A program made the translations under genes and the position numbers. This document shows positions 27,174-43,681 of a DNA stretch of 64,000 bases, in pieces (the first letter of the stretch is position 1; each line of letters opens with the position of its first letter). The DNA lies in the IMG/VR virus record IMGVR_UViG_3300023174_000033, positions 124,001 to 188,000 of that record. The stretch is one strand, 5' to 3'. The notes under the pieces are model-generated. The model did not search any database and had not been told where the DNA came from. It worked only from the letters and a program-made list of their open reading frames with translations.

Positions 27174-30100
27174 TTATAGTAATCTTGTTCCTGTTTTTAT
27201 ATTTACTTCCTTTCTCTTAATTAACTTACTACCAACTTCTAGACTAACAACAGGAATTTGTGTTTGAAAATGATATTTAAAATCCCAAGTTGATTTAAAT
27301 ATGAATGACCTAACTACATGATAACCAAACTCATCTAACATCGGATAAATTGATTTAGCACTTGATACATTTGTCAATTTTAGCAAATTCTTATCTTTGT
27401 TGACTTTTGAAATAATTCTCTCACCACTCATTCCGAAATATGTTAGACTGGTATCAAATTTGTAATTTCCATAATTATCAGTTTCAGTATAAGATTTGAA
27501 AAGTTCAATATTTTTGAATATTGGACTGTAAAATCCACTGTGTCTGTACATCTTGTTAAATATTTCATTTTTCAAACCAGAAAAATTCGGAACAGGTTGT
27601 TTATCAACTCTATTATACCTTATTAAATTCGCATAAGGAACATCACTCACATAATCTAATTTTTCTTTAGAATCTATAACACCATCTTTTAATTCAAACC
27701 TAGGTTTTAATAAATTTGAATCAGTTTCCAAAGCCTCAACTATATTAGTATCTCTTTTTACAAAAAATTCATCTGGTCCCTCACACGTTATGAAAAATGG
27801 TAATTTTGAAACAGATGTCAAATTGTCAAAGTCATAAATTTTAATTTCACCGGTTTCTTCGGTGATTATATACCTCACAGAATTCATAAAATCGTATTTA
27901 TTAGATAAATCATTTAAGGCATTCATAAAATTATTTGCAGATAATTTTTGAAAAATATCTGTATACAATTCATCTCTATTTTTTTCTCTTAATTTATTGC
28001 CCAATTTTATCAACTTACTAACTCCAGAGGGACTTGTCTCCGGCCAAACATCTCCAAGGTTAAGTTCTAATAACGAAGGATCATATGTGTGGTCATTGAT
28101 ATAAATATTAATTAATATATTTTTGAATTTTTTATTTATGTAAATCGCAATACCATTATCCAATGTGCCATCAATCACATCCACCCCTTGAGCAAGTGGG
28201 GTCGCGACGACATTACTATCTTTCAAATACATATAATACCTATTATTCATCTCAATTATATTATTGCCCCTGAAAGTATTATCATATACGAAATCTTTAT
28301 CTGGTTTCAAACTGTATAACCTTACCCAATTTGGATTTTGGTCTGGTGGAAGTGAGTTCTTTGGAATTACAGTAGTACTTGGGCCAGTCATTCCATATAC
28401 AACATCCTTATACAGAACTATATCAAAAGCTTGGTTTTCGTAAGTTTTTGTACCGTTACGAGTGAAAATCCCACCAGTATTTTTTATATTTGGGGAACCA
28501 CCTGCATCAAAACCGTAACCATTGAGTATATTTAATCCAGTTAAACTACCATAACTTACCTTGGGCGTGTATGGATATGTTACTTGTATTGTTCCAACCA
28601 CACCACCGTTGAGATTTGTGTATTCTTTAGTTCCCCTATATTCTACCGAACTACTCCATAGATTTATTTTCTGCCATCTACCCCAGGGCTTATTATTTGG
28701 CTGCAGGGGAGTTCCAGAAAGGGTAAATCCACCAATTGAAGGAATTTCCTTATTTCTCAAATCCGACATTTGAAAAGGAGATTCAACCCAATATGGGAAG
28801 TTCTCAAAAGTATATCTACCGAGAGAAAACTTACTTTGAATAACTTGACCAATTGTACCAGGTATTGTCCTAACTTTGTTGTCACCAGATGTTGGTACAT
28901 TTGTTATTTGACCAGTTGGATTCGCAAACCATATCTTACCTTTATAATAAGCAGCTATTTTTGGTCCGTAACCGATATTAATAAGATCCCAAGGCATAGT
29001 AGATCCAGGTATTGCAGTATCATACCACCATTCATCATCATAATAAACAAAAGGGTGAACTTGTGGAAAAGCAGCATTTGAATAATTACCACTACCCACT
29101 TTCGCAGAAGAAAGAAAAACAGTTTCTGTTACATATTTCGTACCATTTGGATTCCCAACATAATTCCAACCATTGTAATTTGATCCCGCTATCGCATATC
29201 CATTGGACAAATCAACCCAGTATTTATCACTCGGTCTTAAATCAACTTGATTTGCAGGATTAAATGTCGGATCAGTTTCGGTTCTTGTTCCCACTCTCAA
29301 AATCGGATCGTATCCAATTTTCTGTTTTTCAGGATCTGTAGGTTTTGTAGTTATAAAAATTTTATTATTCCAAATTGTCATCTCATACCAATAATACGGT
29401 TTGTCCATTTTCCAATTGTCAATTATGGTCCAATTCATACTATTAAAAAATGATTGGGTCACACCTCTATTTGGATCATCTCCACTTGGAACAACTCTTG
29501 TGTTGTTATCAGATACCAATATGCTAAATTTATAATCGTCAAATTTATTAGTTACCTTTACATTTATTTTATCTAATTTTCCATTTGAAATGTTAACACT
29601 CGCAACATCGTAAATTTTAAATTTCAAACCTCTAAATAAAGTCGAGTTAGTGGTGATCCCATCAGATGGATTGAACTGTGACCATTTTTTTGTGTTTTTG
29701 ATTATTTTGCCATCAGAAAAATCTGTTTTTTGTCCAAAAAAATAAGAGAAATAATCTAAATCTGTTTTGACATATTTTATCACATCAAATTTTAAGTTGA
29801 TGTCAAGTTCACCACCACCTGTGATATTTTTTATATGTAAAGTATGGTTAATATACTTTGTATCATCTGGATTTATTGTATAAAAATAATCTAAATTTTT
29901 CTCACTTCTATTAACTTCAGTTACAAAAGGATTGACTGTTTTATTATAATCATCTGCTAAAAATGAATTATTAAGAAGATATGGATAATCACCATCTGAT
30001 AAAGAATTTTGAAAGGCCCATTTTACTCTCGTTGAGTTTTTTCTCCATAATTCATTTAAATCATTTTCAACAATTCTAAAGGTTTCATTATTAGCAGTGT

Positions 30101-31754
30101 ATTCAGAGGATACAGGAACATTTACAACTTCACCCTCAACTACAAAATCATCAAATTGTTTTGGCTTTGATGTGGATTTTAAATTTTGTAAGTAAAATTT
30201 CGGCTCATCATTTTCAGTTAATATTTGGTCTTCCTCGTACTCAAATTTTGAAAATTCTGTGTCTACTATATCAGTATCCCAATCTTTTATATCTGTGAAT
30301 TCACAACGGTAAATTTCAAATTCTACAGGCTCAATGTCAGCACTACTAACTAAATTAATTGTCTTCTTTAAACTAGGATCCGCCTCATTTATGTAATATT
30401 CAAATTTATCATCAGATTGTATAAAGGCATAATCAGTAACTATAGTGATTATACCATCTACATTCTTATTTAATTTATGATAAAGGTCACCAATCTTTAT
30501 TATCCACATATCATAATTATCAAAATCCGATATTTGAAATTGATTACCATTTTGTAAATAAATAAAATTCTCTCCTTCTTCGGAAATAACTTTTACTAGA
30601 TTTGCATTAATTATTGATTGTTGGTTAGAAAGAGAAACATCTGATAAAATCTTATATTTTATTATTTCTGTTGGAACAATCTTATCAACATAGTTTCCAC
30701 TTTCGGTTAATACTTTTTTCCTTTTTTGCTCACCAATCACTTTGTATTTTTCAACCTTATAAACTCTTCCACCAATTTCAATAAATGGATTCAGATCCAT
30801 ATTATCCAAAAAGGGTGAACTACCGTCAGGCATTTCTAAATTATTATCAAATGTTATAATCGCACCAGGTTTAACTTGTGTGAATTTGTTGGGACTAACT
30901 GATAGAACAAATTCCATTTTATTAAAATAAAATCCCATATATCTATTAATGGACCACTTTCTAATAGAAAGTGGTGTTGCTGGCATATCGTCAAAAAGAA
31001 AACTAAAATTTAAAATATGTGGATATACTATCTTGTTATCGGAAAATCCTTTGTAGATAAACTTTTCCATATCCATAAAGGTGAATTCATTTTGAAAAAC
31101 ACTCTCTAGCATCATAGACCTTTTTGTGTAACCACCGGTCTCATAATCCATACCTATAAAGTATGAAAACTCTAACTTTGAAAATTCAATTTCAAGAGAT
31201 GTAGCTGGAAAATTTGTATTATCAGTAACATTTCTCCTTAAAAATTCTCCCAAATCGGTTTTTGGAGTCATGTCAAATACCTTAACAACTTTCATTTTTG
31301 AAAGTATTTCCGTTTGGAAATTTTCCTTATTCAATTCAATCAGACCAGGTCCATCAATCCTTAATATTATGAAATGTGTTGGTAATCCACTTTTACTAAT
31401 GTGTAAAGGAGCGAAGTATTCAAACTCCTCCGTATAATCTTTATTATCATAAATATTTCTAGCTCCACAATTATATAAGTCATCATATTGTTTTGAGAAA
31501 TCACTATACATTGTGTCATTGTCACCGTCGTATTTAACACCATAAGCAACCTCTACTGGGGTGTTTCTAAAAAAATGTGGGATTAACTCATCAATAAAAT
31601 TTTCTTTTTTGAACCTGTATTTTCTATAACGTACATTATTCAATTCCGGACTGGAGTCAATACAATCCAAATATAATTCGTATCCACTACCAACTACAAA
31701 TTTCGCATTAGTAGTCAGTCCAGTATTCGTTCTAAGTAATCCATGACTTCTCAT
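27174..31754 (-). CDS. Large (1526 aa) putative virion/baseplate protein
   Basis: Size, composition and position in an AATATATA-led operon; no enzyme motifs. Confidence 0.55.
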   Translation of the reverse strand: MRSHGLLRTNTGLTTNAKFVVGSGYELYLDCIDSSPELNNVRYRKYRFKKENFIDELIPHFFRNTPVEVAYGVKYDGDNDTMYSDFSKQYDDLYNCGARNIYDNKDYTEEFEYFAPLHISKSGLPTHFIILRIDGPGLIELNKENFQTEILSKMKVVKVFDMTPKTDLGEFLRRNVTDNTNFPATSLEIEFSKLEFSYFIGMDYETGGYTKRSMMLESVFQNEFTFMDMEKFIYKGFSDNKIVYPHILNFSFLFDDMPATPLSIRKWSINRYMGFYFNKMEFVLSVSPNKFTQVKPGAIITFDNNLEMPDGSSPFLDNMDLNPFIEIGGRVYKVEKYKVIGEQKRKKVLTESGNYVDKIVPTEIIKYKILSDVSLSNQQSIINANLVKVISEEGENFIYLQNGNQFQISDFDNYDMWIIKIGDLYHKLNKNVDGIITIVTDYAFIQSDDKFEYYINEADPSLKKTINLVSSADIEPVEFEIYRCEFTDIKDWDTDIVDTEFSKFEYEEDQILTENDEPKFYLQNLKSTSKPKQFDDFVVEGEVVNVPVSSEYTANNETFRIVENDLNELWRKNSTRVKWAFQNSLSDGDYPYLLNNSFLADDYNKTVNPFVTEVNRSEKNLDYFYTINPDDTKYINHTLHIKNITGGGELDINLKFDVIKYVKTDLDYFSYFFGQKTDFSDGKIIKNTKKWSQFNPSDGITTNSTLFRGLKFKIYDVASVNISNGKLDKINVKVTNKFDDYKFSILVSDNNTRVVPSGDDPNRGVTQSFFNSMNWTIIDNWKMDKPYYWYEMTIWNNKIFITTKPTDPEKQKIGYDPILRVGTRTETDPTFNPANQVDLRPSDKYWVDLSNGYAIAGSNYNGWNYVGNPNGTKYVTETVFLSSAKVGSGNYSNAAFPQVHPFVYYDDEWWYDTAIPGSTMPWDLINIGYGPKIAAYYKGKIWFANPTGQITNVPTSGDNKVRTIPGTIGQVIQSKFSLGRYTFENFPYWVESPFQMSDLRNKEIPSIGGFTLSGTPLQPNNKPWGRWQKINLWSSSVEYRGTKEYTNLNGGVVGTIQVTYPYTPKVSYGSLTGLNILNGYGFDAGGSPNIKNTGGIFTRNGTKTYENQAFDIVLYKDVVYGMTGPSTTVIPKNSLPPDQNPNWVRLYSLKPDKDFVYDNTFRGNNIIEMNNRYYMYLKDSNVVATPLAQGVDVIDGTLDNGIAIYINKKFKNILINIYINDHTYDPSLLELNLGDVWPETSPSGVSKLIKLGNKLREKNRDELYTDIFQKLSANNFMNALNDLSNKYDFMNSVRYIITEETGEIKIYDFDNLTSVSKLPFFITCEGPDEFFVKRDTNIVEALETDSNLLKPRFELKDGVIDSKEKLDYVSDVPYANLIRYNRVDKQPVPNFSGLKNEIFNKMYRHSGFYSPIFKNIELFKSYTETDNYGNYKFDTSLTYFGMSGERIISKVNKDKNLLKLTNVSSAKSIYPMLDEFGYHVVRSFIFKSTWDFKYHFQTQIPVVSLEVGSKLIKRKEVNIKTGTRLL

Positions 31755-34700
31755 TTATGACAAATTGGTTGTAGTTGTTACTAAATTTTTTCTGACTAAA
31801 GTTTTTGCTCTATTCAATGTAAATTTGAGAGTAAATGTAAATGGTTTATTTTCGGCTTCATTTTCCAAGAAGAATTTCACTTTTTTAATATGCTTTACAT
31901 TATTACGATTGTTATTTAAGTTTATGTAATTATAATTCAAGTCTGTTTGATTTGGATCCAATGAATTCATCTTAAAATAAATATTAATCGGCACATTTAT
32001 ATCATTTTCTTGACCACCATCAATTGTCTTAACTTTATCTTGATTTGTTTCTTGTATTACACTCAAAGATTGAATTTGTGGGTGAATAGAAGTCAATAAT
32101 TTTGTCGTTGACGCAGCTGTTGGTACAGTTTTCTCAATCCACTTTGATGCATCAAACAATGAATTGTTATTACCAATAAATGTGAGAAGTTCCGACTCTG
32201 AATAACCTATATTATACTCTTCAGATGAAAGAGTATTTACTAAAGAGTTACTATTATCCGAGACGAAATCATTTCCTATGTTTGAAGAAATCTTTGATAA
32301 ACTGTTTTGGTCAACTTTATCATAGTTTACACACCATATAAACTGATTATCTACCTGAGTTATTGTTTTAGTGCCAGACTCGCTGGTTATAAGTTCGTTT
32401 TGTGAATTAACCCAAAAAACTTGAGGAGCTGAAGTGTTGTAAACATCAGTGTTTGAAACTGCAACGTATTCTCTATTTGAAAGAAGACCTAAAGATGTTT
32501 CTGTTGATTTATTTCTGAATTTAAGCAAGAAATCTTTTATTACGTAGATGTTATTAACATAAACACGACCAGTTGGAACTCCAGACGCAACATACGTGTC
32601 AAGATAATCCTCAAGTTCAATATTGAATGAAAGTTCAGAACCATTCTTAACAATAAATTGTTCACTATTTCTATAGAGAATAATCTCAAGTTCTCCTTTA
32701 GTTCTCTTAATCCTTTCTTCAAGGGATTTAACTCTAGCCTCAAGTTTTTGTAGGTATGTAAATAGGTCCATACTCAAACCGTTCTCATCCCTAAACCCTG
32801 ATAAGATACTATCAGAGTTATGATAGTATGTGTTGCCATTTACTGTAATTTGATCAGATAAGTGATCATCAAGTCCACGAGCCGATAGATTTGCTTGAAC
32901 AGAAACCCTTAAACTTTCTTTATCAGCTTCCTTTAATATGAAATCATTTTCATTTAATACGTTAGCTAAATTTTCAGGAAACTCAATTATTATCGGTTCA
33001 CTCCACTCAGATTCAACTGGTGATTCTGGCCAACCAACTTCAGAAATTGATTTGATTTTTAATTCTACTCTTTCATTAGCTTGAATTGCAATATCAATTT
33101 GGTTGATATTCGGAGTTTCAGCATCAGTAACATCTTCAATTTGCCAAGTGTATGTATTATTAGCTTTATCAAATGTTCTTTTTCTAACATCTGTTTTCAT
33201 TTCCTCCCAATTGGACGCAGCGGCTGTTTGAGTAGTACCTCCAACTTTTTCAAACCTAATTGTTTCAACTGGAGATTCTCTACCATCTTTACTTAAGTAT
33301 CTATATTGTATACGGAATTGTACTATTTCTTGTGGTTGTGAACCCCTTGTAATCACCGCCTCTGGGAATTCCCAGAATCCTCTGATTCGGTATTTTGGTT
33401 CAACTTTTGTTTGTGGAGATTTAGATAAATCCAATAATTGAGTAGTAACAGATGATAACAAATTCAATTTTGATTCTCTGTTCCTATTCAAAACATCCAC
33501 ATCTAATGATATTTGTTTTTGAACCCCATCAAAAGCAAATTTACCAAACTTAGATTGAGCCATCTTATCCTTTAATGACTTTTCCAATTGCTCAACTTCG
33601 GATTTAAGACTCCTCTGTTGATTGTGTAAATTTTTAAGTTTATTTGTATCAGGTGTATCAGTAAGGTGCTTATTTATCTGAACTACTTTGAAGTTATTAA
33701 TATTCAAAACTGGAACATTTGGTATCCCAGCTTGTTTGTTTGGAGTTTTTTTGACTACAAGGTCATTCAATACATCTCCATAATCCATAACAACATCAGT
33801 ATAATATTGCTCAAGGGAAATTGATGAATTCACTTCTCTCAAATCGTTTGTCCAAAAACCCATACCCTGACTCCAGTTTTTTGACATTATGAAGTTATCC
33901 ATATTCATGGATTTTAGGAAAATAATATTTCTTTCGTTATAACCGATACTTACTCTAACCCTCTTATTATATTGGACTGGTGAATAAATTTTCATTATGT
34001 TATCACCAATTGGTATTGGTTCCATTCCCTCAACCCTTTCAAATCTCAATCTTGGGTAAGATAATTCAGTTGATAATTCAATTACCTTATATCTAGTTGA
34101 AGTGACCGGTGTGTTAATAATAAACTCATCACCAATTTTAACTGTTCTGATTTCTTGAACTACCTCATTGTTCAACTTTATATTTCTGATATACTGTAGA
34201 GTATTTGTCACATACCATAATTTCCTATTCAAGAAATCCTCTTCTGTTCTTAAAATGCTGAAAAAACCGTCTAGTTCCAAGAAGTTTGGCTCAAGATCGA
34301 ACATTTGTTCGTCATAGTTTGGGTTATTAGGTTCAACCAATCCAGGTGTATTTATATGCCAAGTCAAAAATTCATCTAATGAAAAAGCATTTTGATTTCT
34401 AAATAAAGTATTGAATGAATTTAAAGCAGCTTGACCAAGTGGAGTAAAATTACCATCAACGTCTTGAGCGAACTCAACAATATATCTCCTACAAAGAATC
34501 TTTCTAACATTGTTCTCAACTTGTCCATCAAGATTCATTTCCAAAAATAACTGAGGATTCAATAAACCATCAAAGAACCAGTTTTTCTGAGTAACGAAAG
34601 TTGTCTGTTGTACTAAAGTTCCTATATCATTTGGTTCTCTATTCAAATCAACCGTTACGACCTTTCTGAATTTAGTACCATTTGATGGTTGGATCAAAGC

Positions 34701-34946
34701 GCCAGCATCATTTATACTATAAATTGAATTTAAATTATTATTTAATCTGTCAATTTCAGACTTCAAGTATCCAAAAGACGGAAGACTTACTTGGCGTGTA
34801 TTACCAGTACCATCAACTAAATTGAAAGTAACAGAATTCTCATTGCCGGAAATTAAACTATTTATACTTGATAGTACATTGACTACGTTTTCATTTAACT
34901 TTAATACCTCCTCTGCTAAAACATGGTAGGAACTGTTTATTGCCAT
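31755..34946 (-). CDS. Large (1063 aa) putative virion structural protein with coiled-coil segments
   Basis: AATATATA at 34968-34975 (-); heptad segments LKSEVEQLEKSL and LQKLEARVKSLEERI. Confidence 0.55.
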   Translation of the reverse strand: MAINSSYHVLAEEVLKLNENVVNVLSSINSLISGNENSVTFNLVDGTGNTRQVSLPSFGYLKSEIDRLNNNLNSIYSINDAGALIQPSNGTKFRKVVTVDLNREPNDIGTLVQQTTFVTQKNWFFDGLLNPQLFLEMNLDGQVENNVRKILCRRYIVEFAQDVDGNFTPLGQAALNSFNTLFRNQNAFSLDEFLTWHINTPGLVEPNNPNYDEQMFDLEPNFLELDGFFSILRTEEDFLNRKLWYVTNTLQYIRNIKLNNEVVQEIRTVKIGDEFIINTPVTSTRYKVIELSTELSYPRLRFERVEGMEPIPIGDNIMKIYSPVQYNKRVRVSIGYNERNIIFLKSMNMDNFIMSKNWSQGMGFWTNDLREVNSSISLEQYYTDVVMDYGDVLNDLVVKKTPNKQAGIPNVPVLNINNFKVVQINKHLTDTPDTNKLKNLHNQQRSLKSEVEQLEKSLKDKMAQSKFGKFAFDGVQKQISLDVDVLNRNRESKLNLLSSVTTQLLDLSKSPQTKVEPKYRIRGFWEFPEAVITRGSQPQEIVQFRIQYRYLSKDGRESPVETIRFEKVGGTTQTAAASNWEEMKTDVRKRTFDKANNTYTWQIEDVTDAETPNINQIDIAIQANERVELKIKSISEVGWPESPVESEWSEPIIIEFPENLANVLNENDFILKEADKESLRVSVQANLSARGLDDHLSDQITVNGNTYYHNSDSILSGFRDENGLSMDLFTYLQKLEARVKSLEERIKRTKGELEIILYRNSEQFIVKNGSELSFNIELEDYLDTYVASGVPTGRVYVNNIYVIKDFLLKFRNKSTETSLGLLSNREYVAVSNTDVYNTSAPQVFWVNSQNELITSESGTKTITQVDNQFIWCVNYDKVDQNSLSKISSNIGNDFVSDNSNSLVNTLSSEEYNIGYSESELLTFIGNNNSLFDASKWIEKTVPTAASTTKLLTSIHPQIQSLSVIQETNQDKVKTIDGGQENDINVPINIYFKMNSLDPNQTDLNYNYINLNNNRNNVKHIKKVKFFLENEAENKPFTFTLKFTLNRAKTLVRKNLVTTTTNLS

Positions 34947-36875: not shown

Positions 36876-36986
36876 AAAGGATTTTATTTTATTTTAAATT
36901 TTTGTTGTTTTATAAAGAATAATAAAATATATTTGTACTCCGATTACGAATGATGAAAACAAACCAAAGAAATCCAATATAAATAT

Positions 36987-37040: not shown

Positions 37041-37646
37041 ATGTCAGAAACAAATCAAATTAATTCATTTAGAGAACATGAAACTCTTTTCAAAGAAAGA
37101 ACTGGTAACGATTTCACTTTCTTTTACAAGAAGTATTACCCCAAGTTAATTTACTACACCTCAAAAATGTGTGGAGATCAACAAAAAGCAGAGGATATTA
37201 CAACAGAGTCTTTCATGACTGCTTTTGAGAAGATTGAAAAGTATGAGAAAGAAAAAGCCCAATTCTCTACTTGGTTGTTTACAATCGCGAGAAATATTCT
37301 TTTACAGGATATCAAAGCTTCAAAAAAGACAATTTCACTTGATATTGAATACGATGAAGAGGGAACCACTCTTAAAGATTTTATTCAAGAGGAATCCTCT
37401 GAAACACACGTTCATGAAGTAAATCAGAAGAAAGCTGAAATCATGAAGGAACACATTTCAAAATTAAAAGATCCTTATAAAAAGGTGATTGAAATGAGAG
37501 AAATAAAAAGAATGGCTTATAAAGATATCGCCGATGAATTAGGAAAAAATCTTTCAACCATTAAGAGCCAAATAAGAAATGGAAGAATTCTTCTTATCTC
37601 TCAAACAAAAAAAGAATTTGATCTACTTGATGAATTCTATCTATAA
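37041..37646 (+). CDS. RNA polymerase sigma-70 (ECF-like) factor
   Basis: Region 2 AEDITTESF...FSTWLFTIARN; region 4 YKDIADELGKNLSTIKSQIRNGR. Confidence 0.9.
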   Translation: MSETNQINSFREHETLFKERTGNDFTFFYKKYYPKLIYYTSKMCGDQQKAEDITTESFMTAFEKIEKYEKEKAQFSTWLFTIARNILLQDIKASKKTISLDIEYDEEGTTLKDFIQEESSETHVHEVNQKKAEIMKEHISKLKDPYKKVIEMREIKRMAYKDIADELGKNLSTIKSQIRNGRILLISQTKKEFDLLDEFYL

Positions 37647-37661
37647 AAATAATTATTAAGT

Positions 37662-37985
37662 ATGTATTACTCAACAAAAATTAACAACGAAAGCCTAGAC
37701 AGTTTTCTATCAACAGCCCAATTAGCAATGTTGTATATAAAAGCCTCATGGTGTGGTCCTTGCAAAATATTGTCACCGGTAGTTGAAGAAATTGCCAACG
37801 AACCAAATAACAATTTAGTTGTTGGAAAAATTGACGCAGATGATGATATGGAATTTGTAAAGTCTCTAAACGTAAGAAATGTGCCAACTATTTTATTTTA
37901 TAAAGAAGGTGAACTTGTGGAAAGGAGTGTGGGGGCTAAATCAAAAGGTGATATCCAAAAGATAATTGAAAATTTAACAGCATGA
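37662..37985 (+). CDS. trxA: Thioredoxin
   Basis: WCGPC and VRNVPT. Confidence 0.92.
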   Translation: MYYSTKINNESLDSFLSTAQLAMLYIKASWCGPCKILSPVVEEIANEPNNNLVVGKIDADDDMEFVKSLNVRNVPTILFYKEGELVERSVGAKSKGDIQKIIENLTA

Positions 37986-38950
37986 GTTTAATTCGCAAAT
38001 TTGTAAATAAACATTACAAACACTTCAATTCAGCGTCTCTTAAAGATGCTTCAGATTCTTACATTTCACACATTGAGGAAGGTGGTAAAATGATGATCAC
38101 TTTAGCCGGCGCTATGAGTACAGCCGAGCTTGGAATTTCTTTGGCTGAAATGATTAGACAAGATAAAGTACATATTATCTCTTGTACAGGAGCAAACCTA
38201 GAAGAAGATTTAATGAATCTAGTTGCTCACTCACACTACAAAAGAGTTCCAAACTATCGTGATCTAACACCACAAGATGAATGGGATTTATTAGAACAGG
38301 GACTAAATAGAGTAACAGATACTTGTATACCAGAAGAAGAAGCTTTCAGAAAGATTCAGAAAGTGATTGAGAAGTATTGGAGAATTTCTAATAAAACTGG
38401 AATTCCAATGCTGCCACACGAATACCTATACCTAATTATTAACAATGGTGATTTGGAGTCTGAATATGAAATTGATCCAAAAGATTCTTGGTTGGTAGCA
38501 GCCGCTGAAAAAAACATCCCCTTAATTGTACCAGGTTGGGAAGATTCCACCCTTGGAAATATATTCGCATCAAATGTGATTAAGGGAAATCTTAAATCAA
38601 CTGACATTAAAGGTGGTATTGATTACATGGTTTTCCTATCTGATTGGTATAGAAATAACTCTGATGGTAAAGGAGTTGGGTTCTTTCAAATTGGTGGAGG
38701 TATCGCAGGAGACTTTCCAATCTGTGTAGTTCCGATGATGTATCAAGATTTAGAATGGACTGATGTTCCTTTCTGGTCTTACTTCTGTCAGATTTCTGAT
38801 TCAACCACAAGTTATGGTTCCTATTCTGGAGCTGTGCCAAATGAAAAGATTACTTGGGGTAAATTAGATATAACAACACCAAAATTCATCATTGAAAGTG
38901 ATGCTACAATAGTAGCTCCTTTGATGTTTTCTTACATTCTAGGAGAATAA
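37982..38950 (+). CDS. Deoxyhypusine synthase-like protein (bacterial DHS/SpeY type)
   Basis: LAGAMSTA, TGANLEED, IGGG, SYSGAVPNEKITWGK (catalytic Lys), ESDATIVAPL. Confidence 0.9.
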   Translation: MSLIRKFVNKHYKHFNSASLKDASDSYISHIEEGGKMMITLAGAMSTAELGISLAEMIRQDKVHIISCTGANLEEDLMNLVAHSHYKRVPNYRDLTPQDEWDLLEQGLNRVTDTCIPEEEAFRKIQKVIEKYWRISNKTGIPMLPHEYLYLIINNGDLESEYEIDPKDSWLVAAAEKNIPLIVPGWEDSTLGNIFASNVIKGNLKSTDIKGGIDYMVFLSDWYRNNSDGKGVGFFQIGGGIAGDFPICVVPMMYQDLEWTDVPFWSYFCQISDSTTSYGSYSGAVPNEKITWGKLDITTPKFIIESDATIVAPLMFSYILGE

Positions 38951-38952
38951 AT

Positions 38953-39138
38953 ATGGACACAAATGAAATTTGGGTTATCACGAAGAGTACCGATGGTGGT
39001 ATGGAACTAAAACCTTTTGAAAATTCAAAAGGTTTTGAGATCATTGAAGAGTTTGAAAGTTTCAACGAGGCAAAAGAAGCATTTAATTTCTACTGTTACC
39101 TTTTACTACCAAGATTTGGACAAAACATGAATTTTTAG
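38953..39138 (+). CDS. Small hypothetical protein
   Basis: 61-aa ORF filling the operon gap. Confidence 0.5.
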   Translation: MDTNEIWVITKSTDGGMELKPFENSKGFEIIEEFESFNEAKEAFNFYCYLLLPRFGQNMNF

Positions 39139-39146
39139 TATATTTG
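39115..39146 (+). promoter_or_regulatory. Bacteroidota-type primary-sigma promoter
   Basis: TTTG(39115)-N20-TATATTTG(39139-39146)-TATT-ATG. Confidence 0.75.
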
Positions 39147-39150
39147 TATT

Positions 39151-39888
39151 ATGATTATAATGTTAGGTGATATCCATGGAAACTTTAATTTCCTAAAAAA
39201 TCAAATCCAATCTAAAAAAATTACTGATTGTACGATAATACAAGTCGGTGATTTTGGAATTGGTTTTACACATAAGGACAATGACGAAATAACTTTAAAA
39301 AATTTAAACGATTTTTTGGAGTCACATAATGTTAATCTTTATGCAATTCGTGGTAATCACGATAATCCGGATTTTTTTGATGGAAGTTTTAGATATAGTA
39401 ATTTGAAACTTTTAAAGGATTACACAACTCTTAATATAGATGGGTTGAATTTTCTTTTCATTGGTGGGGCTATAAGTGTGGATAGAACCCAAAGAATTAA
39501 AGAAAATACAAGTAACATTAAATATGGTAGTAAAAAAAGGTGTTATTGGGAAAAAGAAGTATTGGAATACAAACCAGAGATTGTTAAATCTTTAAAAGAT
39601 ATAGATATTGTAATAACACACACTGCTCCAGATTGGTGTAGTCCAAGCAATAAATTGGGATTTGGAAGTTTTGTTGAAGATTGGAGTAAATATGATAGGT
39701 CTCTTATTACAGACTTACTTTCCGAAAGAAATCAAATGTCAAATTTATTTCTAGATTTATACGAAAACAATAAAATAAAAAAACACTTTTATGGACACTT
39801 CCATGATAGTAAATTTGAAACATATGATGGAGTTGATCATCACCTACTTGATATTAATGAATTTTATACATTAAATATAGATAGATAA
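39151..39888 (+). CDS. Calcineurin-like metallophosphoesterase
   Basis: GDIHG, VGDFG, RGNHD, THTAP, YGHFH. Confidence 0.9.
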   Translation: MIIMLGDIHGNFNFLKNQIQSKKITDCTIIQVGDFGIGFTHKDNDEITLKNLNDFLESHNVNLYAIRGNHDNPDFFDGSFRYSNLKLLKDYTTLNIDGLNFLFIGGAISVDRTQRIKENTSNIKYGSKKRCYWEKEVLEYKPEIVKSLKDIDIVITHTAPDWCSPSNKLGFGSFVEDWSKYDRSLITDLLSERNQMSNLFLDLYENNKIKKHFYGHFHDSKFETYDGVDHHLLDINEFYTLNIDR

Positions 39889-39972
39889 AAAACATTTTTT
39901 ATTTACGATATATAACTTCAAGTTTGATAAAAGAGATTGGGCCCCACAAAGGGGTTCAAAAAAAAAATTTCT

Positions 39973-40821
39973 ATGTTTAACACACTTACTTACCATGCTC
40001 TCGTACAAAAGATGCGAGACTTTTTTTTGCAAAAAGGATTCTATGAAGTCCCCACGCAATCAAGACTGTCAATACTAGCAGCTTGTGAAAATCCTCACTC
40101 AATAACCACCTACAATTACCAAGGACTGGTTTGGCCACTTCCTCAAACGGGGCAAATGTGGTTAGAGTATGAATTACTCAAAAATCCAGAATGGCCAGGA
40201 TGTTTCTGTATTTCTACATCTTATAGACAAGAGAAAGATCCAATTCCTGGAAGACACGAACTAATTTTCCCAATGTTTGAATTTGAGTCTAAAGGAGGCA
40301 TTGAGGAAATGAAAAAACTTGAATCGGAACTACTTGAACATCTAGGATTCTCAAAACCTGTTGAAGTAAAGTATGACGATGTTTGTGAGGAGTATGGTGG
40401 AGTCCAAATCCTTGAGAACGAACACGAACAAAAAATGTGGAATGAAAAGGGTTCTGTAGTTTCTCTACAATATTTTCCAAGAAGAACAAACCCATTCTGG
40501 AATATGAAGAATAAAGATGGGCAAATTTTCAATAAAATTGATGTTATTCTCTATGGTCAAGAAACTATTGGTTCTGCTGAAAGAAGTTGTGACATTGAAA
40601 AAATGAGAGAAATGTTCTATACTATTGAAGATGGAAAATATTCAGATAAACTTTTTGAACTATTCGGTAAAGAAAGAGTTGAAAATGAATTAGAAGAATT
40701 TTTCAAACATGATTTCTTTCCAAGATTTGGAGGAGGAATTGGAATGACTAGATTAGCAAGGGCTTACGAATTGTTACAAAAAGAAAAGGTCACCACTCAA
40801 ATAGAAGAAAATGTTTATTGA
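39973..40821 (+). CDS. Class IIb (Asp/Asn/Lys) aminoacyl-tRNA synthetase paralogue, catalytic domain only
   Basis: Motif 1 MRDFFLQKGFYEVPT, motif 2 SYRQE...RH...FPMFEFE, ETIGSAER, motif 3 GGGIGMTRL; no anticodon-binding domain; probable start at ATG 39973. Confidence 0.82.
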   Translation: MFNTLTYHALVQKMRDFFLQKGFYEVPTQSRLSILAACENPHSITTYNYQGLVWPLPQTGQMWLEYELLKNPEWPGCFCISTSYRQEKDPIPGRHELIFPMFEFESKGGIEEMKKLESELLEHLGFSKPVEVKYDDVCEEYGGVQILENEHEQKMWNEKGSVVSLQYFPRRTNPFWNMKNKDGQIFNKIDVILYGQETIGSAERSCDIEKMREMFYTIEDGKYSDKLFELFGKERVENELEEFFKHDFFPRFGGGIGMTRLARAYELLQKEKVTTQIEENVY

Positions 40822-41374
40822 GCCACTTATAACTCAAAAAAACGTAGGATGGATTGAAGTAATCTGCGGATCAATGTTCTCGGGTAAAACCGAGGAATTG
40901 ATCCGTAGATTAAATCGTGGTATTTTAGCTAAAAAAGAAATATATATCTTCAAACCAAAAATTGACGATAGATACGACGAAAAAAACATCGTATCTCACA
41001 ATAAAAAATCAATTAATTCTATTCCGATAGAAAGTCCAAACGAAATACTACAACACATAAAAGATGGTGGGATTATTGGAATTGACGAGGCACAGTTTTT
41101 TGATAATTCCCTAATAGATATAGTGGAGTATTTAGCTAATAAGGGATTTAGAATTATAATTGCTGGGTTGGATATGGATTACTTGGGAAAACCATTCGGA
41201 CCTATGCCACAATTACTTTCTATTGCGGAATTTGTTACCAAGGTTAACGCAATATGTATGAATTGTGGAGGAGTTGCGTCTCATACATACAGATTGGATT
41301 CCTCCGAAGAGCAGATTCTAATCGGATCGACTTCTAAATACGAAGCAAGATGTCGTAAGTGCTACTCACTCTAA
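40811..41374 (+). CDS. tdk: Thymidine kinase
   Basis: GSMFSGKTEEL, IDEAQF, AGLD, CMNC and CRKC zinc site. Confidence 0.95.
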   Translation: MFIEPLITQKNVGWIEVICGSMFSGKTEELIRRLNRGILAKKEIYIFKPKIDDRYDEKNIVSHNKKSINSIPIESPNEILQHIKDGGIIGIDEAQFFDNSLIDIVEYLANKGFRIIIAGLDMDYLGKPFGPMPQLLSIAEFVTKVNAICMNCGGVASHTYRLDSSEEQILIGSTSKYEARCRKCYSL

Positions 41375-41376
41375 AT

Positions 41377-43626
41377 TCAAGAATATTTAGTTTGCCCAGT
41401 TGGATAATTAGGTAAAGATAATCTCTGATTTGCATTATCAGCAAACACTAGATACTTTGAATCGTCTCTAACAATCGATTGATTCAATATTGTAGATTGT
41501 TGATTTTTAGGAATTATTTGAGTGAACATTCTCAAATTAGTAATCTTCATATCACAAGATTGTAATCTAAATTGTTCATTCTCAATTAACATATCCACTG
41601 GTGTATGAGGTAAAGATTTTGAATAAACTAATCTTAATTCAGTTGAATTTAATAAAGCTCCTCTGTTTTCATTATTAATATTTCGTTTATAAAGGAATTG
41701 ATCAACAGTCCTATTCCTTTGGTCAATATTGAGAATATAACCATACCAAGTTTCTTCTTCAATTCCAATCGCACCACCACTAGTAGCACCTAGAGTTAAG
41801 GGATACTCAACATTGTTTATTGTTGTGGTTATTTGATCATGTTTCAAACTAACTTTGAATCCTTGATTGGTGTTTTCGTCATAATAAGTTGATAGGTAAT
41901 AATTATCATTTACAGTGTAATTATTAATATTAAACCAACAAGTAAAGGATATATTATCAGACTTTGAGTAACTTGACTTGATCTTTCTATAAACGACAGC
42001 ATCACTTGTAAATGTAGCACCAAATAAACCAGTTGATAAATCATAATTTGTTCTACTGATAACATTTTCAGCATTTTCCACCAATTGTTTAATTATAGGA
42101 GCCCCGATAAATGTTCTCAAATCATCTCTAGTAAGAGGTTTGAATTGTTCTTTGTTAGCAACTGCTGCCTTGTCTTCTTGCTTTTCTTTTCCAAAGAGTT
42201 CATCAATAGTAGAGTTCTTTGTAAGAGATCTGACTTTGTCGGTAATTGTTTGATTCGCTCCAATAATGTTGGCCTTTTGAGTGTATTTCTTCAACATTAC
42301 CTTGTAATAGATGGCGTAATTATTGAAAGACCTAAACGGTTGAGCGTGTTCAACAGTGAACATTCTGTTTATCTCTGCGAACCAAAGGAAGTCTTCTTTT
42401 GAAGGTCTCTTCTCTACTCCAAATGCTTTCTTGAAAATCTCTTTTGGTATATGGATTTCAAAACTATCAAATAGAGATAAATCAAATTGATTTATACTAC
42501 CATTGTTTTCAGGAAATTGATTATTCTCAACTGAAACTTTAACCAATGCCTCACACACATAGTTAAAAAGTTGGTATTCGTGAAACGTATAATCTGTTCC
42601 CTTTTTATCTGGGTCAGTGAGGAAATATACAACTTCATGTCCAAATATTTCATTTGAATCATTACTCAATTTATTTAAAAGTGTATTTACCTGATTTAAC
42701 TGGTATGGTTTGAACAACTGATTTTTCTGATCATCTGTTAAAGTTGGTAAAGTATTTGTTTGAATTTGTTGAGTAAGTAATTGTGATTGACCACCAGTAG
42801 GAAATTGATTAGCATTTGATGGGTCTCCAACAATATTTAATTTTAACGAGTTAGCATTTTCCCTAACACCAAAAAGATTTGTTTTTTTGTAATCTAAACT
42901 AACATTTTGAAAATCACCTATTAAATTAATATCATGAATTTTAGTATTTGATTCACCAAGATAAGTCAAAAGATATTCAATTTGGAAAAATCTGATGGGT
43001 GTGATTCTTGCTGTTGAAATATTTTCTTTATTTAGAAATTCCCAATCAGTGACAGTCCTCCCATAATCTTGTGAGTATCTATACTTAATTGTAACATCAT
43101 TAATATCACCAGTATAAAGAATTTCAACATCTTCAATTTTAAATACTTTGTAAATATAAGGTGGTTTTAGAATAACTTCTGAATTATTTTCTGTTAGTTG
43201 TATGGTCTTGTCACCAGTTTCAATAACACGTTCTAAATCCCCCAGTAATTTGTATTCTAATAGTTTCAACACCCCAATGTCGGAAGTGCCCTTTCTAACA
43301 AATCTTAAGTCTAAATGTAAGTTATCGGTAGTATTGAATGGTGGGAAGTTAATTATGTTTGATGGTAAGTTACACCATTCTGTCCAAGATAAACCATTTC
43401 GGCTTATTCTGAACTCTGCATTGAGATACCTTGTATCTGTTTTACCAGTATAGTCAAAGGTGAATGTTTTGAATTTTTCAACACCATAGACCTCCGCAAA
43501 ACTTACACTATATTCTTGACCCGAGTAAGAAAAGGTTGGAGCAGCATTTGGACCAGTTGCACTTATTGGAAAAGAATCAGATATTGTAATAACACCATTT
43601 GAACTATCTTTAATTATTTGTGGCAT
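41377..43626 (-). CDS. T4 gp14-like neck/head-completion protein with N-terminal extension and C-terminal LamG-like domain
   Basis: FGHEVVYF...FEIHIPKEIF...RPSKEDFLWF...MFTVEH resembles gp14; ISFTCWFN...TWYGY...ITNLRMF resembles LamG; start revised to 43626, 5 nt after AATATATA. Confidence 0.55.
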   Translation of the reverse strand: MPQIIKDSSNGVITISDSFPISATGPNAAPTFSYSGQEYSVSFAEVYGVEKFKTFTFDYTGKTDTRYLNAEFRISRNGLSWTEWCNLPSNIINFPPFNTTDNLHLDLRFVRKGTSDIGVLKLLEYKLLGDLERVIETGDKTIQLTENNSEVILKPPYIYKVFKIEDVEILYTGDINDVTIKYRYSQDYGRTVTDWEFLNKENISTARITPIRFFQIEYLLTYLGESNTKIHDINLIGDFQNVSLDYKKTNLFGVRENANSLKLNIVGDPSNANQFPTGGQSQLLTQQIQTNTLPTLTDDQKNQLFKPYQLNQVNTLLNKLSNDSNEIFGHEVVYFLTDPDKKGTDYTFHEYQLFNYVCEALVKVSVENNQFPENNGSINQFDLSLFDSFEIHIPKEIFKKAFGVEKRPSKEDFLWFAEINRMFTVEHAQPFRSFNNYAIYYKVMLKKYTQKANIIGANQTITDKVRSLTKNSTIDELFGKEKQEDKAAVANKEQFKPLTRDDLRTFIGAPIIKQLVENAENVISRTNYDLSTGLFGATFTSDAVVYRKIKSSYSKSDNISFTCWFNINNYTVNDNYYLSTYYDENTNQGFKVSLKHDQITTTINNVEYPLTLGATSGGAIGIEEETWYGYILNIDQRNRTVDQFLYKRNINNENRGALLNSTELRLVYSKSLPHTPVDMLIENEQFRLQSCDMKITNLRMFTQIIPKNQQSTILNQSIVRDDSKYLVFADNANQRLSLPNYPTGQTKYS

Positions 43627-43649
43627 AATTATATATATTTTATATTTTT

Positions 43650-43681
43650 TTTGGCAATCCAAGATATTTGTAGTAATTTTG
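43650..43681 (+). promoter_or_regulatory. Bacteroidota-type primary-sigma promoter
   Basis: TTTG(43650)-N20-TAATTTTG(43674-43681). Confidence 0.7.

What the first reader, a model, noticed from the sequence alone, without database searches (positions are those of the whole stretch)
37982..40821. Deoxyhypusine-synthase-like enzyme clustered with an anticodon-less class IIb aaRS paralogue: candidate phage translation-factor or polyamine modification system
Seen: a DHS-family protein with the intact WGK catalytic lysine, and three genes downstream a 282-aa protein with aaRS-II motifs 1-3 but no anticodon-binding domain. Established: DHS modifies eIF5A/aIF5A, and the catalytic-domain-only LysRS paralogue EpmA modifies EF-P, the bacterial eIF5A homologue. 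However, bacterial DHS homologues (SpeY) make homospermidine precursors, and AsnRS-derived paralogues can be asparagine synthetases. Inference: the phage either rewires EF-P or other protein lysine modification, or makes and aminoacylates a polyamine. The two genes may also be independent metabolic genes, since each has its own promoter-like site upstream.
Basis: partly seen in the sequence, partly recalled or inferred. Interest (0 to 1): 0.68.

Follow-up and report, generated by a model that had tools for sequence, protein, structure and literature searches.

The report
Two unrelated phage metabolic genes
A 465-kb freshwater phage carries a polyamine-synthesis gene copied from its Bacteroidota host and, three genes away, a virus-specific stripped-down asparaginyl-tRNA-synthetase core; the two are real and probably active, but they are neighbours by accident, not a system for modifying a translation factor.

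Summary
Both genes exist as described. The DHS-family gene is at 37982-38950 with the catalytic lysine K294. The 282-aa class IIb aaRS core ('X') is at 39973-40821, with no anticodon domain. They are not a conserved pair. Of 80 viral loci with X, one has the DHS gene within 10 kb. Of 24 viral contigs with the DHS gene, three have X, and in two of those X is on the opposite strand. The DHS-like protein is 64-79% identical to a single-copy Bacteroidia gene and keeps 183 of 193 positions invariant there. A Bacteroidota orthologue-type enzyme (SpeY) is published as making bis-guanidino-homospermidine from agmatine. Other phages and bacteria place an agmatinase-fold gene beside it. The phage has no efp. 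Most DHS-positive Bacteroidia have EF-P with Asn, not Lys, at the modification site. X belongs to a large, mostly viral family (phrog_29758, function unknown). It is closest to AsnRS cores and has an AsnRS-type pocket. Elsewhere X sits beside a long-variable-arm tRNA-Asn, or is fused or adjacent to PyrD/PyrE/PyrF. Its function is unresolved; asparagine supply or charging is my best guess. Phage-borne SpeY appears new.

The parts
36928..36935 (+). TAnnTTTG box (Bacteroidota-type -7 element), candidate promoter for the co-directional block sigma-trx-DHS
   Evidence: Pattern search. The motif is enriched in the window (137 against 102 +/- 10). Function is not shown.
37041..37646 (+). ECF-type sigma-70 family factor, first gene of the co-directional block
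   Evidence: Pfam Sigma70_r2 and r4_2; the best NCBIfam hit is a Bacteroidetes-type subfamily. It is syntenic in close relatives.
37662..37985 (+). Thioredoxin; its stop overlaps the DHS start by 4 nt
   Evidence: Pfam Thioredoxin, 2.4e-22. The junction was read.
37982..38950 (+). DHS-family protein (322 aa), SpeY-type, derived from the host
   Evidence: Pfam DS 2.4e-38. It is 64-79% identical to a single-copy Bacteroidia gene. It keeps 183 of 193 positions that are invariant in bacteria.
38861..38863 (+). Codon of the catalytic lysine K294 (I-T-W-G-K)
   Evidence: The residue is invariant in all 44 bacterial and viral homologues aligned.
38953..39138 (+). 61-aa ORF of unknown function
   Evidence: It is conserved at 74% identity in the closest relative, L018/L146. 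There is no family hit.
39151..39888 (+). Calcineurin-like metallophosphoesterase
   Evidence: Pfam Metallophos 2.4e-10; phrog_1649 2.5e-28. A metallophosphoesterase lies near X in part of the clade.
39810..39817 (+). TAnnTTTG box about 155 nt upstream of X, candidate separate promoter for X-TK
   Evidence: Function is not shown.
39973..40821 (+). X: a 282-aa class IIb aaRS catalytic core without an anticodon-binding domain, member of viral family phrog_29758
   Evidence: PF00152; phrog_29758 3.9e-102. AF2 model with pLDDT 96.3. Best structural matches are AsnRS cores, Z 27.7.
40225..40227 (+). Codon of R85, the motif 2 arginine of X
   Evidence: Family conservation.
40750..40752 (+). Codon of R260, the motif 3 arginine of X
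   Evidence: Family conservation.
40811..41374 (+). Thymidine kinase; its start overlaps the end of X by 11 nt
   Evidence: Pfam TK 9.4e-54; NF003296 257 bits, over its cut-off. The junction was read.

Best explanation
The two genes are independent auxiliary metabolic genes. They happen to lie in one tightly packed co-directional block (sigma, thioredoxin, DHS-like, 61-aa ORF, phosphoesterase, X, thymidine kinase). The block belongs to a roughly 465-kb freshwater phage that most likely infects Bacteroidota. (1) The DHS-like gene is a recent capture of the host's SpeY-type enzyme. By inference it uses NAD and K294 to couple two agmatine molecules into N1,N9-bis(guanidino)homospermidine. A host ureohydrolase or iminohydrolase then converts that product to homospermidine. 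This would raise the polyamine pool during infection. The phage supplies only this one step. (2) X belongs to a large, mostly viral family derived from an AsnRS/AspRS catalytic core. It keeps every residue needed to form an aminoacyl-adenylate and has the AsnRS-type side-chain pocket. My best guess is that it serves asparagine supply for translation of an Asn-rich proteome (7.0% Asn). It could do so as an AsnA/AS-AR-like asparagine synthetase or by activating Asn for tRNA-Asn. What is shown: gene presence, family membership, conservation, phyletic independence and contexts. What is inferred: both chemistries.
For: Independence of the two genes:
- One of 80 X-bearing viral loci has the DHS gene within 10 kb.
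- Three of 24 DHS-bearing viral contigs have X, all with at least 86% DHS identity. In two of them X is inverted, behind an SLT gene.
- X occurs in cyanophages and in other huge phages; no DHS homologue matched in the GenBank phage collection at E 1e-5.

SpeY reading of the DHS-like gene:
- It is 64-79% identical to a single-copy gene found in 44 of 61 Bacteroidia genomes.
- It retains 183 of 193 bacterial-invariant positions, including K294.
- A Bacteroidota SpeY (Winogradskyella algicola) and five other SpeYs make G44G, whereas human and plant DHS do not (PMC13625781).
- An arginase-fold gene lies directly upstream of the orthologue in genomes G013, G029 and G035. The same is seen beside the viral homologues in L158, L161 and L164.
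- Phage L161 carries arginase-fold, DHS-like, pyruvoyl-decarboxylase-like and agmatine-deiminase-like genes in one block.
- The best NCBIfam model is 'homospermidine biosynthesis protein'.

Against an EF-P role:
- The phage has no efp.
- 27 of 41 DHS-positive Bacteroidia have EF-P with Asn at the modification site, against 1 of 15 DHS-negative genomes.

X:
- The AF2 model has pLDDT 96.3.
- VIA Z-scores are 27.7 for AsnRS, 26.5 for archaeal AspRS, 24.2 for AS-AR and 23.7 for EpmA.
- The family profile against PDB gives AsnRS 2.6e-14, AS-AR 2.6e-6 and EpmA 2e-5.
- The pocket has the AsnRS-type 'Q..LE' and conserved R85, E197, S201, R204 and R260.
- A tRNA-Asn(GUU) lies 1-270 nt downstream of X in eight loci belonging to two clades.

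Other: contigs from an RNA library lie on the DHS gene, the phosphoesterase, X and TK.
Against: - SpeY activity was not tested for this protein.
- The sequence of the characterised W. algicola enzyme was not on hand, so orthology is inferred from single-copy status.
- The protein scores far below the NCBIfam equivalog cut-offs (110 against 450 bits).
- The phage lacks arginine decarboxylase and agmatinase.
- One candidate host-like genome (G001) showed no arginase-fold gene.
- For X, the asparagine reading leaves unexplained two natural fusions and two further adjacencies to PyrD/PyrE/PyrF.
- This genome has no tRNA-Asn of any kind.
- In this phage and in its closest relative, L018/L146, the genes are co-directional, separated by small gaps or short overlaps, and may be co-transcribed. 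A clade-specific joint use cannot be excluded.
Confidence: 0.6

Rival explanations
1. One reading: the DHS-like enzyme and X together modify EF-P or another protein lysine, by analogy with eIF5A hypusination and EpmA lysylation.
For: Both parent families include translation-factor modifiers. The genes are co-directional and closely spaced here and in L018/L146. In one compact Bacteroidia genome (G038) efp lies 45 nt from the DHS-like gene.
Against: The phage has no efp. X scores 16.8 bits against the EpmA model, whose cut-off is 286.9, and it is closer to AsnRS in both sequence and structure. The two genes do not co-occur outside one small clade, and their orientation flips within it. Most DHS-positive Bacteroidia, including G038, have EF-P with Asn rather than Lys at the tip. 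SpeY homologues, including a Bacteroidota one, are shown to be G44G synthases (PMC13625781).
Confidence: 0.04
2. Joint use specific to this clade: X ligates an amino acid (Asn or Asp) to the polyamine made through the DHS-like enzyme.
For: Tight co-directional packing in the window and in L146. Adenylate-forming enzymes can acylate amines (general knowledge).
Against: Seventy-nine of 80 X loci lack the DHS gene nearby, and 21 of 24 DHS loci lack X. X has the same active-site residues in phages without any DHS gene. In L147 and L160 X is on the opposite strand.
Confidence: 0.06
3. X is a pyrimidine-pathway enzyme. One candidate reaction is an ATP-driven ring closure of N-carbamoyl-aspartate to dihydroorotate: adenylation of the beta-carboxylate, as AsnA does with aspartate, followed by intramolecular amide formation. 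This would supply the step before PyrD.
For: There are two natural fusions, PyrD+X (P0249, found on 7 contigs) and X+PyrF (P0272). PyrE or PyrE-PyrF lies next door in both cases. PyrD and PyrE-PyrF are also adjacent to X in L129/L144 and in L134, the latter beside an NCLDV capsid gene. In the short stretches read (4.4-20.8 kb) PyrD, PyrE and PyrF were found beside X, i.e. pathway steps 4 to 6; no query for PyrB or PyrC was run there. The fused domains have the same key residues as the window's X. In the window X overlaps thymidine kinase, and relatives have dNK, NT5C or DHFR nearby.
Against: This genome has no PyrD, PyrE or PyrF. Three of the four pyr-linked arrangements (L014, L129/L144, L134) fall in one clade, and the fourth (L017) lies on a long, unplaced branch, so the linkage may have few origins. 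The pocket keeps the Glu that binds a free alpha-amino group in AsnRS. The tRNA-Asn linkage is left unexplained. There is no biochemical precedent in this fold.
Confidence: 0.2
4. [quoted passage not shown] It charges tRNA without reading the anticodon. Where a phage carries one, its partner is a dedicated tRNA(GUU) with a long variable arm.
For: Eight loci in two X clades have an 85-93-nt tRNA(GUU) directly downstream. It has a 4-7-bp variable-arm stem, U at position 37 and G73. The tRNA shows compensatory stem changes between the two groups, so pair and gene have travelled together. X has an AsnRS-type pocket and a motif 2 loop of AsnRS length.
Against: No such tRNA, and no tRNA-Asn at all, is found in this genome or in the 80 nearest viral loci. 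The three known anticodon-domain-less class IIb paralogues (AsnA, AS-AR, EpmA) do not charge tRNA (general knowledge). The tRNA keeps the normal AsnRS identity set (GUU and G73), so a host AsnRS could charge it.
Confidence: 0.2

Closest known systems
SpeY, the bacterial DHS homologue that makes N1,N9-bis(guanidino)homospermidine from agmatine (Li et al. 2026, PMC13625781)
   Same: It has the DS fold and the catalytic lysine. It is 64-79% identical to the single-copy Bacteroidia gene, and a Bacteroidota member of that group was assayed. Arginase-fold or agmatine-deiminase-like genes are neighbours in some bacterial and viral homologues.
   Different: It is encoded by a phage, without any partner gene in this genome. 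It scores below the NCBIfam equivalog cut-offs. Its activity is untested. A 2023 survey found no SpeY in viruses (PMC9992855).
Deoxyhypusine synthase of eukaryotes and archaea
   Same: Same Pfam family; the NAD-binding glycines and the catalytic lysine are conserved.
   Different: Similarity to solved DHS structures is only E 1e-9 to 1e-6. The phage has no eIF5A, aIF5A or EF-P. Human and plant DHS do not make G44G.
Asparaginyl-tRNA synthetase catalytic domain
   Same: It is the best structural match (Z 27.7, rmsd 1.8 A over 244 residues) and the best profile match (2.6e-14). Motifs 2 and 3 are shared, as is the 'Q..LE' plus Arg pocket.
   Different: X has no anticodon-binding OB fold and is about 30 residues shorter. 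Family-specific residues are C38, N177, K188, C206 and R251. It scores 22.8 bits against a cut-off of 342.6 for the asnS model.
Archaeal asparagine synthetase A (AS-AR, PDB 3P8T/3REU) and bacterial AsnA
   Same: Same architecture, a class IIb core alone of about 290 aa. The AS-AR structure aligns over its full length (Z 24.2).
   Different: AS-AR is a weaker match than AsnRS or AspRS (2.6e-6). There is no match to AsnA. X appears to be an independent truncation.
EpmA (GenX/PoxA), the EF-P lysine aminoacylase
   Same: A class IIb core without an anticodon domain.
   Different: EpmA is LysRS-derived. Its model scores 16.8 bits against 286.9, and its profile E-value is 2e-5. The phage has no EF-P; epmB was not searched for.
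HisZ, the HisRS-like regulatory subunit of ATP phosphoribosyltransferase
   Same: An aaRS-core paralogue tied to a phosphoribosyltransferase pathway. This mirrors the X-PyrE adjacency in some viruses.
   Different: As far as I know, HisZ has lost the catalytic residues (recalled, not tested here), whereas X keeps all of them. No sequence relationship was tested.

Membership tests
Deoxyhypusine synthase family (Pfam PF01916) | Profile match above the gathering score | tested here: met
   132.5 bits against 27, covering 10-287 of 288 profile positions.
Deoxyhypusine synthase family (Pfam PF01916) | Catalytic lysine that forms the enzyme-imine intermediate | tested here: met
   K294 in I-T-W-G-K aligns with the W-[NG]-K of solved DHS. 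It is invariant in 44 homologues.
True DHS (eIF5A/aIF5A modifier) | Equivalog-level similarity (TIGR00321, NF002006) | tested here: not met
   79.8 bits against 304, and 104 against 434.
True DHS (eIF5A/aIF5A modifier) | A protein substrate with an acceptor lysine (eIF5A, aIF5A or EF-P) | tested here: not met
   There is no efp in the 465-kb genome. EF-P of 27 of 41 DHS-positive Bacteroidia has Asn at the site.
SpeY (G44G synthase) | Orthology to a biochemically characterised SpeY | tested here: inconclusive
   It is 64-79% identical to a single-copy gene of 44 of 61 Bacteroidia. The assayed Winogradskyella sequence itself could not be fetched. NF001980 gives 110 bits against a cut-off of 450.
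SpeY (G44G synthase) | Genomic association with arginine decarboxylase and an agmatinase or agmatine iminohydrolase | tested here: inconclusive
   The partners are absent from this phage. They are present beside homologues in phages L161, L158 and L164 and in genomes G013, G029 and G035.
SpeY (G44G synthase) | Formation of G44G from agmatine | not testable with these tools
   Requires expression and LC-MS.
EpmA | Equivalog model TIGR00462 | tested here: not met
   16.8 bits against 286.9. It ranks below AsnRS, AspRS and AS-AR.
Asparaginyl-tRNA synthetase | N-terminal anticodon-binding OB fold | tested here: not met
   Only PF00152 is matched. The model begins at the catalytic core.
Asparaginyl-tRNA synthetase | Class II motifs 2 and 3 and the AsnRS-type Leu-Glu plus Arg pocket | tested here: met
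   R85, R260, L64-E65 and R204 are conserved in 88-92% of the family.
Asparaginyl-tRNA synthetase | Equivalog model TIGR00457 | tested here: not met
   22.8 bits against 342.6.
Asparagine synthetase A (AsnA / AS-AR) | Sequence membership | tested here: not met
   AsnA was not among the Pfam or NCBIfam matches of X at E 0.01. AS-AR matches only at 2.6e-6, weaker than AsnRS.
Asparagine synthetase A (AsnA / AS-AR) | Conversion of Asp, NH3 and ATP to Asn | not testable with these tools
   Requires an enzyme assay or complementation.
phrog_29758 (viral family, function unknown) | Profile match | tested here: met
   E 3.9e-102, covering 9-265 of 267 positions.

The most novel reading that the evidence does not exclude
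X represents a virus-specific enzyme class built on an AsnRS core, with a function not yet described. One possibility is an ATP-dependent dihydroorotate-forming step that completes a viral PyrD-PyrE-PyrF module. The other is an anticodon-blind synthetase paired with a dedicated long-variable-arm tRNA(GUU). Separately, the strikingly conserved Bacteroidia DHS-like gene (81-87% identity across the class) could have a second, macromolecular substrate.
Probability: 0.3. Interest if true: 0.8.

Novelty: new member of a known kind. Interest (0 to 1): 0.5.

Why it matters
A 2023 survey of virus-encoded polyamine metabolism found no SpeY or DHS homologue in any virus. Here there are 24 viral contigs with one. 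One of them is a phage with what looks like a complete agmatine-to-homospermidine module. This extends phage control of host polyamines to the homospermidine pathway used by many Bacteroidota.

The aaRS-like gene belongs to a very abundant, mostly viral family that has no assigned function. The family occurs in cyanophages, huge phages and giant-virus bins. Its recurrent links to an odd tRNA-Asn and to pyrimidine genes give concrete, cheap experiments. These could reveal a new viral route into either translation or nucleotide supply.

Tried and rejected
- **Phage efp:** searched and found none.
- **Phage arginase/agmatinase, ODC/ADC and relatives of the L161 pathway genes:** none found.
- **Phage PyrD/E/F:** none found.
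- **tRNA-Asn, or the long-arm tRNA(GUU), in this genome:** none found with ARAGORN, Rfam tRNA or a purpose-built covariance model. The only extra hit is a degenerate tRNA-like 3' half at G000:95929-96011.
- **Conserved neighbours of the DHS-like gene in 20 Bacteroidia loci:** none within 1.5 kb. The AMP-binding and dNK neighbours seen in one MAG are not conserved.
- **Sigma-70 promoter and terminator scan:** not above chance.
- **Whole-record search of the 591-kb and 147-kb relatives for the DHS gene:** those records are not held. Absence there is therefore known only for the 8 kb read on each side of X in those loci.
- **Alignment-based IMG/VR scan with the 51-sequence alignment:** The scan with the X+PyrF fusion found nothing.
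- **Literature searches:** no paper found on this aaRS-like family, its tRNA partner or its pyr fusions.
- **ESM Atlas look-up:** it only confirmed a mostly viral family.
- **Pfam on the giant ORFs:** nothing.
- **Not run:** a protein-protein complex prediction, because I make no binding claim.


Full report
**Observation.** The region holds seven co-directional genes, separated by 2-84 nt or overlapping by up to 11 nt:
- ECF sigma factor, 37041-37646
- thioredoxin, 37662-37985
- DHS-family protein, 37982-38950
- 61-aa ORF, 38953-39138
- metallophosphoesterase, 39151-39888
- class IIb aaRS catalytic core 'X', 39973-40821
- thymidine kinase, 40811-41374

The DHS-family protein matches Pfam DS at 2.4e-38. 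Its lysine K294 sits in I-T-W-G-K and aligns with the catalytic lysine region of solved DHS. X is 282 aa from the ATG that its database relatives also use. It matches only the catalytic domain PF00152. Only the claim of separate sigma-70-like promoters is not reproduced (19 sites against 20.9 expected).

**Genome and host.** The window is bases 124001-188000 of a 464,605-bp IMG/VR virus record. The record is rated 98% complete, has 32% GC and carries seven tRNAs, none for Asn. It recurs in freshwater and lake metagenomes from several studies. Identical contigs turn up in two runs of a second study. Contigs from one metatranscriptome library lie on parts of the DHS gene, the phosphoesterase, X and TK. 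This is weak evidence of expression, because DNA can contaminate such libraries. Three things point to a Bacteroidota host:
- the Bacteroidetes-type ECF sigma factor;
- enrichment of TAnnTTTG, 137 against 102 +/- 10;
- the origin of the DHS gene, described next.

**The DHS-like gene.**
- *Relatives.* Its nearest relatives (85-93% identity) are on phage-like contigs. Next come 'deoxyhypusine synthase family' proteins of Flavobacteriales, Chitinophagales and other Bacteroidota at 76-79%.
- *Distribution in bacteria.* In an even sample of 61 Bacteroidia genomes, 44 hold one copy at 64-79% identity. Twenty of those copies, from loci L098-L117, are 81-87% identical to the copy of one Flavobacteriales MAG.
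- *Conservation.* The phage protein keeps 183 of the 193 positions that are invariant in 20 of them. This points to an enzyme under selection with the host function.
- *Published function.* Li et al. 2026 (PMC13625781) showed that SpeY homologues from six phyla, including the Bacteroidota species Winogradskyella algicola, make G44G from agmatine. Human and Arabidopsis DHS do not. Ureohydrolases or iminohydrolases then finish homospermidine.
- *Context in bacteria.* An arginase-fold gene lies directly upstream of the orthologue in genomes G013, G029 and G035.
- *Context in viruses.* IMG/VR holds 24 contigs with a homologue. Three have an adjacent arginase-fold gene.
- *Phage L161.* This contig carries terminase, helicase, primase and polymerase genes. 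It also has arginase-fold, DHS-like, pyruvoyl-decarboxylase-like and agmatine-deiminase-like genes in one run.
- *What this phage lacks.* The window's phage has none of these partner genes. It would depend on host agmatine and on host finishing enzymes.
- *Novelty.* None of 50,697 GenBank phage records matched the protein at E 1e-5. The 2023 virosphere survey reported no viral SpeY or DHS (PMC9992855).

**Test of the EF-P idea.** The phage encodes no EF-P. I extracted EF-P from 56 of the 61 Bacteroidia genomes. The results are in the table.

| Genomes | Asn at K34-equivalent (P-G-N-L-R-A) | Lys | Other |
|---|---|---|---|
| DHS-positive (41) | 27 | 11 | 3 |
| DHS-negative (15) | 1 | 13 | 1 |

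The DHS-like gene is therefore associated with EF-P forms that lack the acceptor lysine. The Fisher p-value is 1.4e-4, uncorrected for phylogeny. This is the opposite of what an EF-P deoxyhypusination system predicts. The single genome where efp and the DHS-like gene are adjacent (G038) also has the Asn form.

**The aaRS-like gene X.**
There are 683 representatives at 50% clustering. X matches phrog_29758, which has no assigned function, and the family is mostly viral.
- *Structure.* An AF2 model has pLDDT 96.3. It aligns best with AsnRS catalytic domains (Z 27.7, rmsd 1.8 A, 244 residues). Archaeal AspRS follows at 26.5, AS-AR at 24.2, and EpmA and LysRS at about 23.5.
- *Sequence.* A family profile gives the same order against PDB: AsnRS 2.6e-14, AspRS 2.6e-13, AS-AR 2.6e-6, EpmA 2e-5, AsnA nothing.
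- *Active site.* The family conserves the motif 2 and 3 arginines, the acidic Mg/ATP residues and the Glu that binds the alpha-amino group. It has the AsnRS-type Leu-Glu where AspRS has Lys-Gln. Family-specific Cys38, Asn177, Lys188, Cys206 and Arg251 are also conserved.
- *Conclusion.* X is an active adenylate-forming enzyme with an Asn/Asp-type pocket. It is not an EpmA.

**Contexts of X elsewhere.**
- *(a) tRNA.* In cyanophages P-SSM2, P-SSM5 and P-SSM7, and in five marine viral contigs, an 85-93-nt tRNA(GUU) lies 1-270 nt downstream. It has a long variable arm, U37 and G73. The two tRNA groups differ by compensatory stem changes.
- *(b) Pyrimidine genes.* X is fused to dihydroorotate dehydrogenase (P0249, on 7 contigs) or to OMP decarboxylase (P0272). 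PyrE or PyrE-PyrF lies next door. X is also adjacent to PyrD and PyrE-PyrF in L129/L144 and in L134, the latter beside an NCLDV major capsid gene. The fused domains carry the same key residues as the window's X.
- *(c) The window's own clade.* In the 87-row clade that holds the window's X, neighbours vary and neither linkage occurs. Neighbours there include Hsp70, FKBP, phosphoesterase, lysozyme and PPK2 genes.
- *Caveat on the tree.* The tree is the quick IQ-TREE version. All 117 rows of at least 200 residues were kept, and L012, L017, L011 and L014 sit on long branches.

**Are the two genes a pair?** No.
- Of 80 IMG/VR loci with X (68-87% identity), only the closest relative has the DHS gene within 10 kb.
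- Of 24 contigs with the DHS gene, three have X. All are close relatives. In two of them, and in the 89-kb assembly L009, X is inverted behind an SLT gene.
Whole-record absence could not be checked for most contigs.

**Mechanism and odds.** I put about 0.75 on the DHS-like enzyme being a SpeY-type G44G/homospermidine-pathway enzyme that boosts host polyamines. For X the odds are:
- about 0.35 for asparagine synthetase-like supply of Asn;
- about 0.2 for direct tRNA-Asn charging;
- about 0.2 for a pyrimidine-pathway role;
- the remainder for something else.

Joint action on a polyamine gets about 0.06, and joint action on EF-P about 0.04.

**Limits.**
- No enzyme activity was tested.
- The SpeY assignment rests on inferred orthology.
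- The EF-P and context statistics are not corrected for phylogeny.
- Viral contigs are fragments, so absence is local.

Noticed in passing
L001:6786-6873, L013:3765-3852, L002:6778-6864, L135:2759-2843, L137:10800-10884, L138:5920-6012, L139:5235-5327, L140:1460-1546: A tRNA with anticodon GUU (Asn) but a long, type-II-like variable arm, U at position 37 and G73. It always lies directly downstream of an X homologue, in two X clades. In P-SSM2 the record's own tRNA-Asn coordinates differ from where ARAGORN finds it.
   Followed up: partly
L014:6793-8778, L017:544-2310, L129:7707-10798, L134:4341-6928: X homologues are fused to PyrD or PyrF, or sit beside PyrD and PyrE-PyrF. L134 also carries an NCLDV major capsid gene, so the family reaches giant viruses.
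   Followed up: partly
L161:6832-19254: A 130-kb phage contig carries arginase-fold, DHS-like, phrog_12759, pyruvoyl-decarboxylase-like and agmatine-deiminase-like genes. They are embedded among QueD, radical-SAM, GTP cyclohydrolase and QueC genes of the 7-deazaguanine pathway.
   Followed up: partly
Bacteroidia EF-P loci L170-L225: Many Bacteroidia EF-Ps have P-G-N-L-R-A in place of the canonical P-G-K-G loop. This form tracks the presence of the DHS-like gene (27 of 41 against 1 of 15). In G040, G032 and G046 efp lies within about 1 kb of an arginase-fold gene, and in G038 it lies 45 nt from the DHS-like gene.
   Followed up: partly
window 10170-20837 (-), 27174-31754 (-), 31755-34946 (-), 41377-43662 (-): Very large ORFs of 3555, 1526, 1063 and 761 aa have no Pfam match. 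The 1063-aa one matches phrog_29329, of unknown function.
   Followed up: partly
G000:C1:1-60 and 464546-464605 (outside the window): Both ends of the contig consist of similar G/C-rich short repeats of the kind seen in collagen-like (Gly-X-Y) genes. The assembly probably broke inside a repeat.
   Followed up: no
G000:C1:95929-96011 (-) (outside the window): A tRNA-like 3' half, with a T arm plus a long extra arm. It scores 21.9 bits with the long-arm tRNA model but is not called a tRNA by ARAGORN at default settings.
   Followed up: partly
window, whole: The Bacteroidota-type promoter box TAnnTTTG is over-represented: 137 against 102 +/- 10, and no shuffle reaches 137.
   Followed up: partly
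G048:C111:114-407: A short contig in a Bacteroidia MAG carries a fragment 89% identical to the phage DHS-like protein, with a TGA inside. It is probably phage DNA binned with the MAG.
   Followed up: no
L011:6919-8481: In the 735-kb uncultured phage LR756501, the X homologue is followed by a RimK-like ATP-grasp ligase gene.
   Followed up: no
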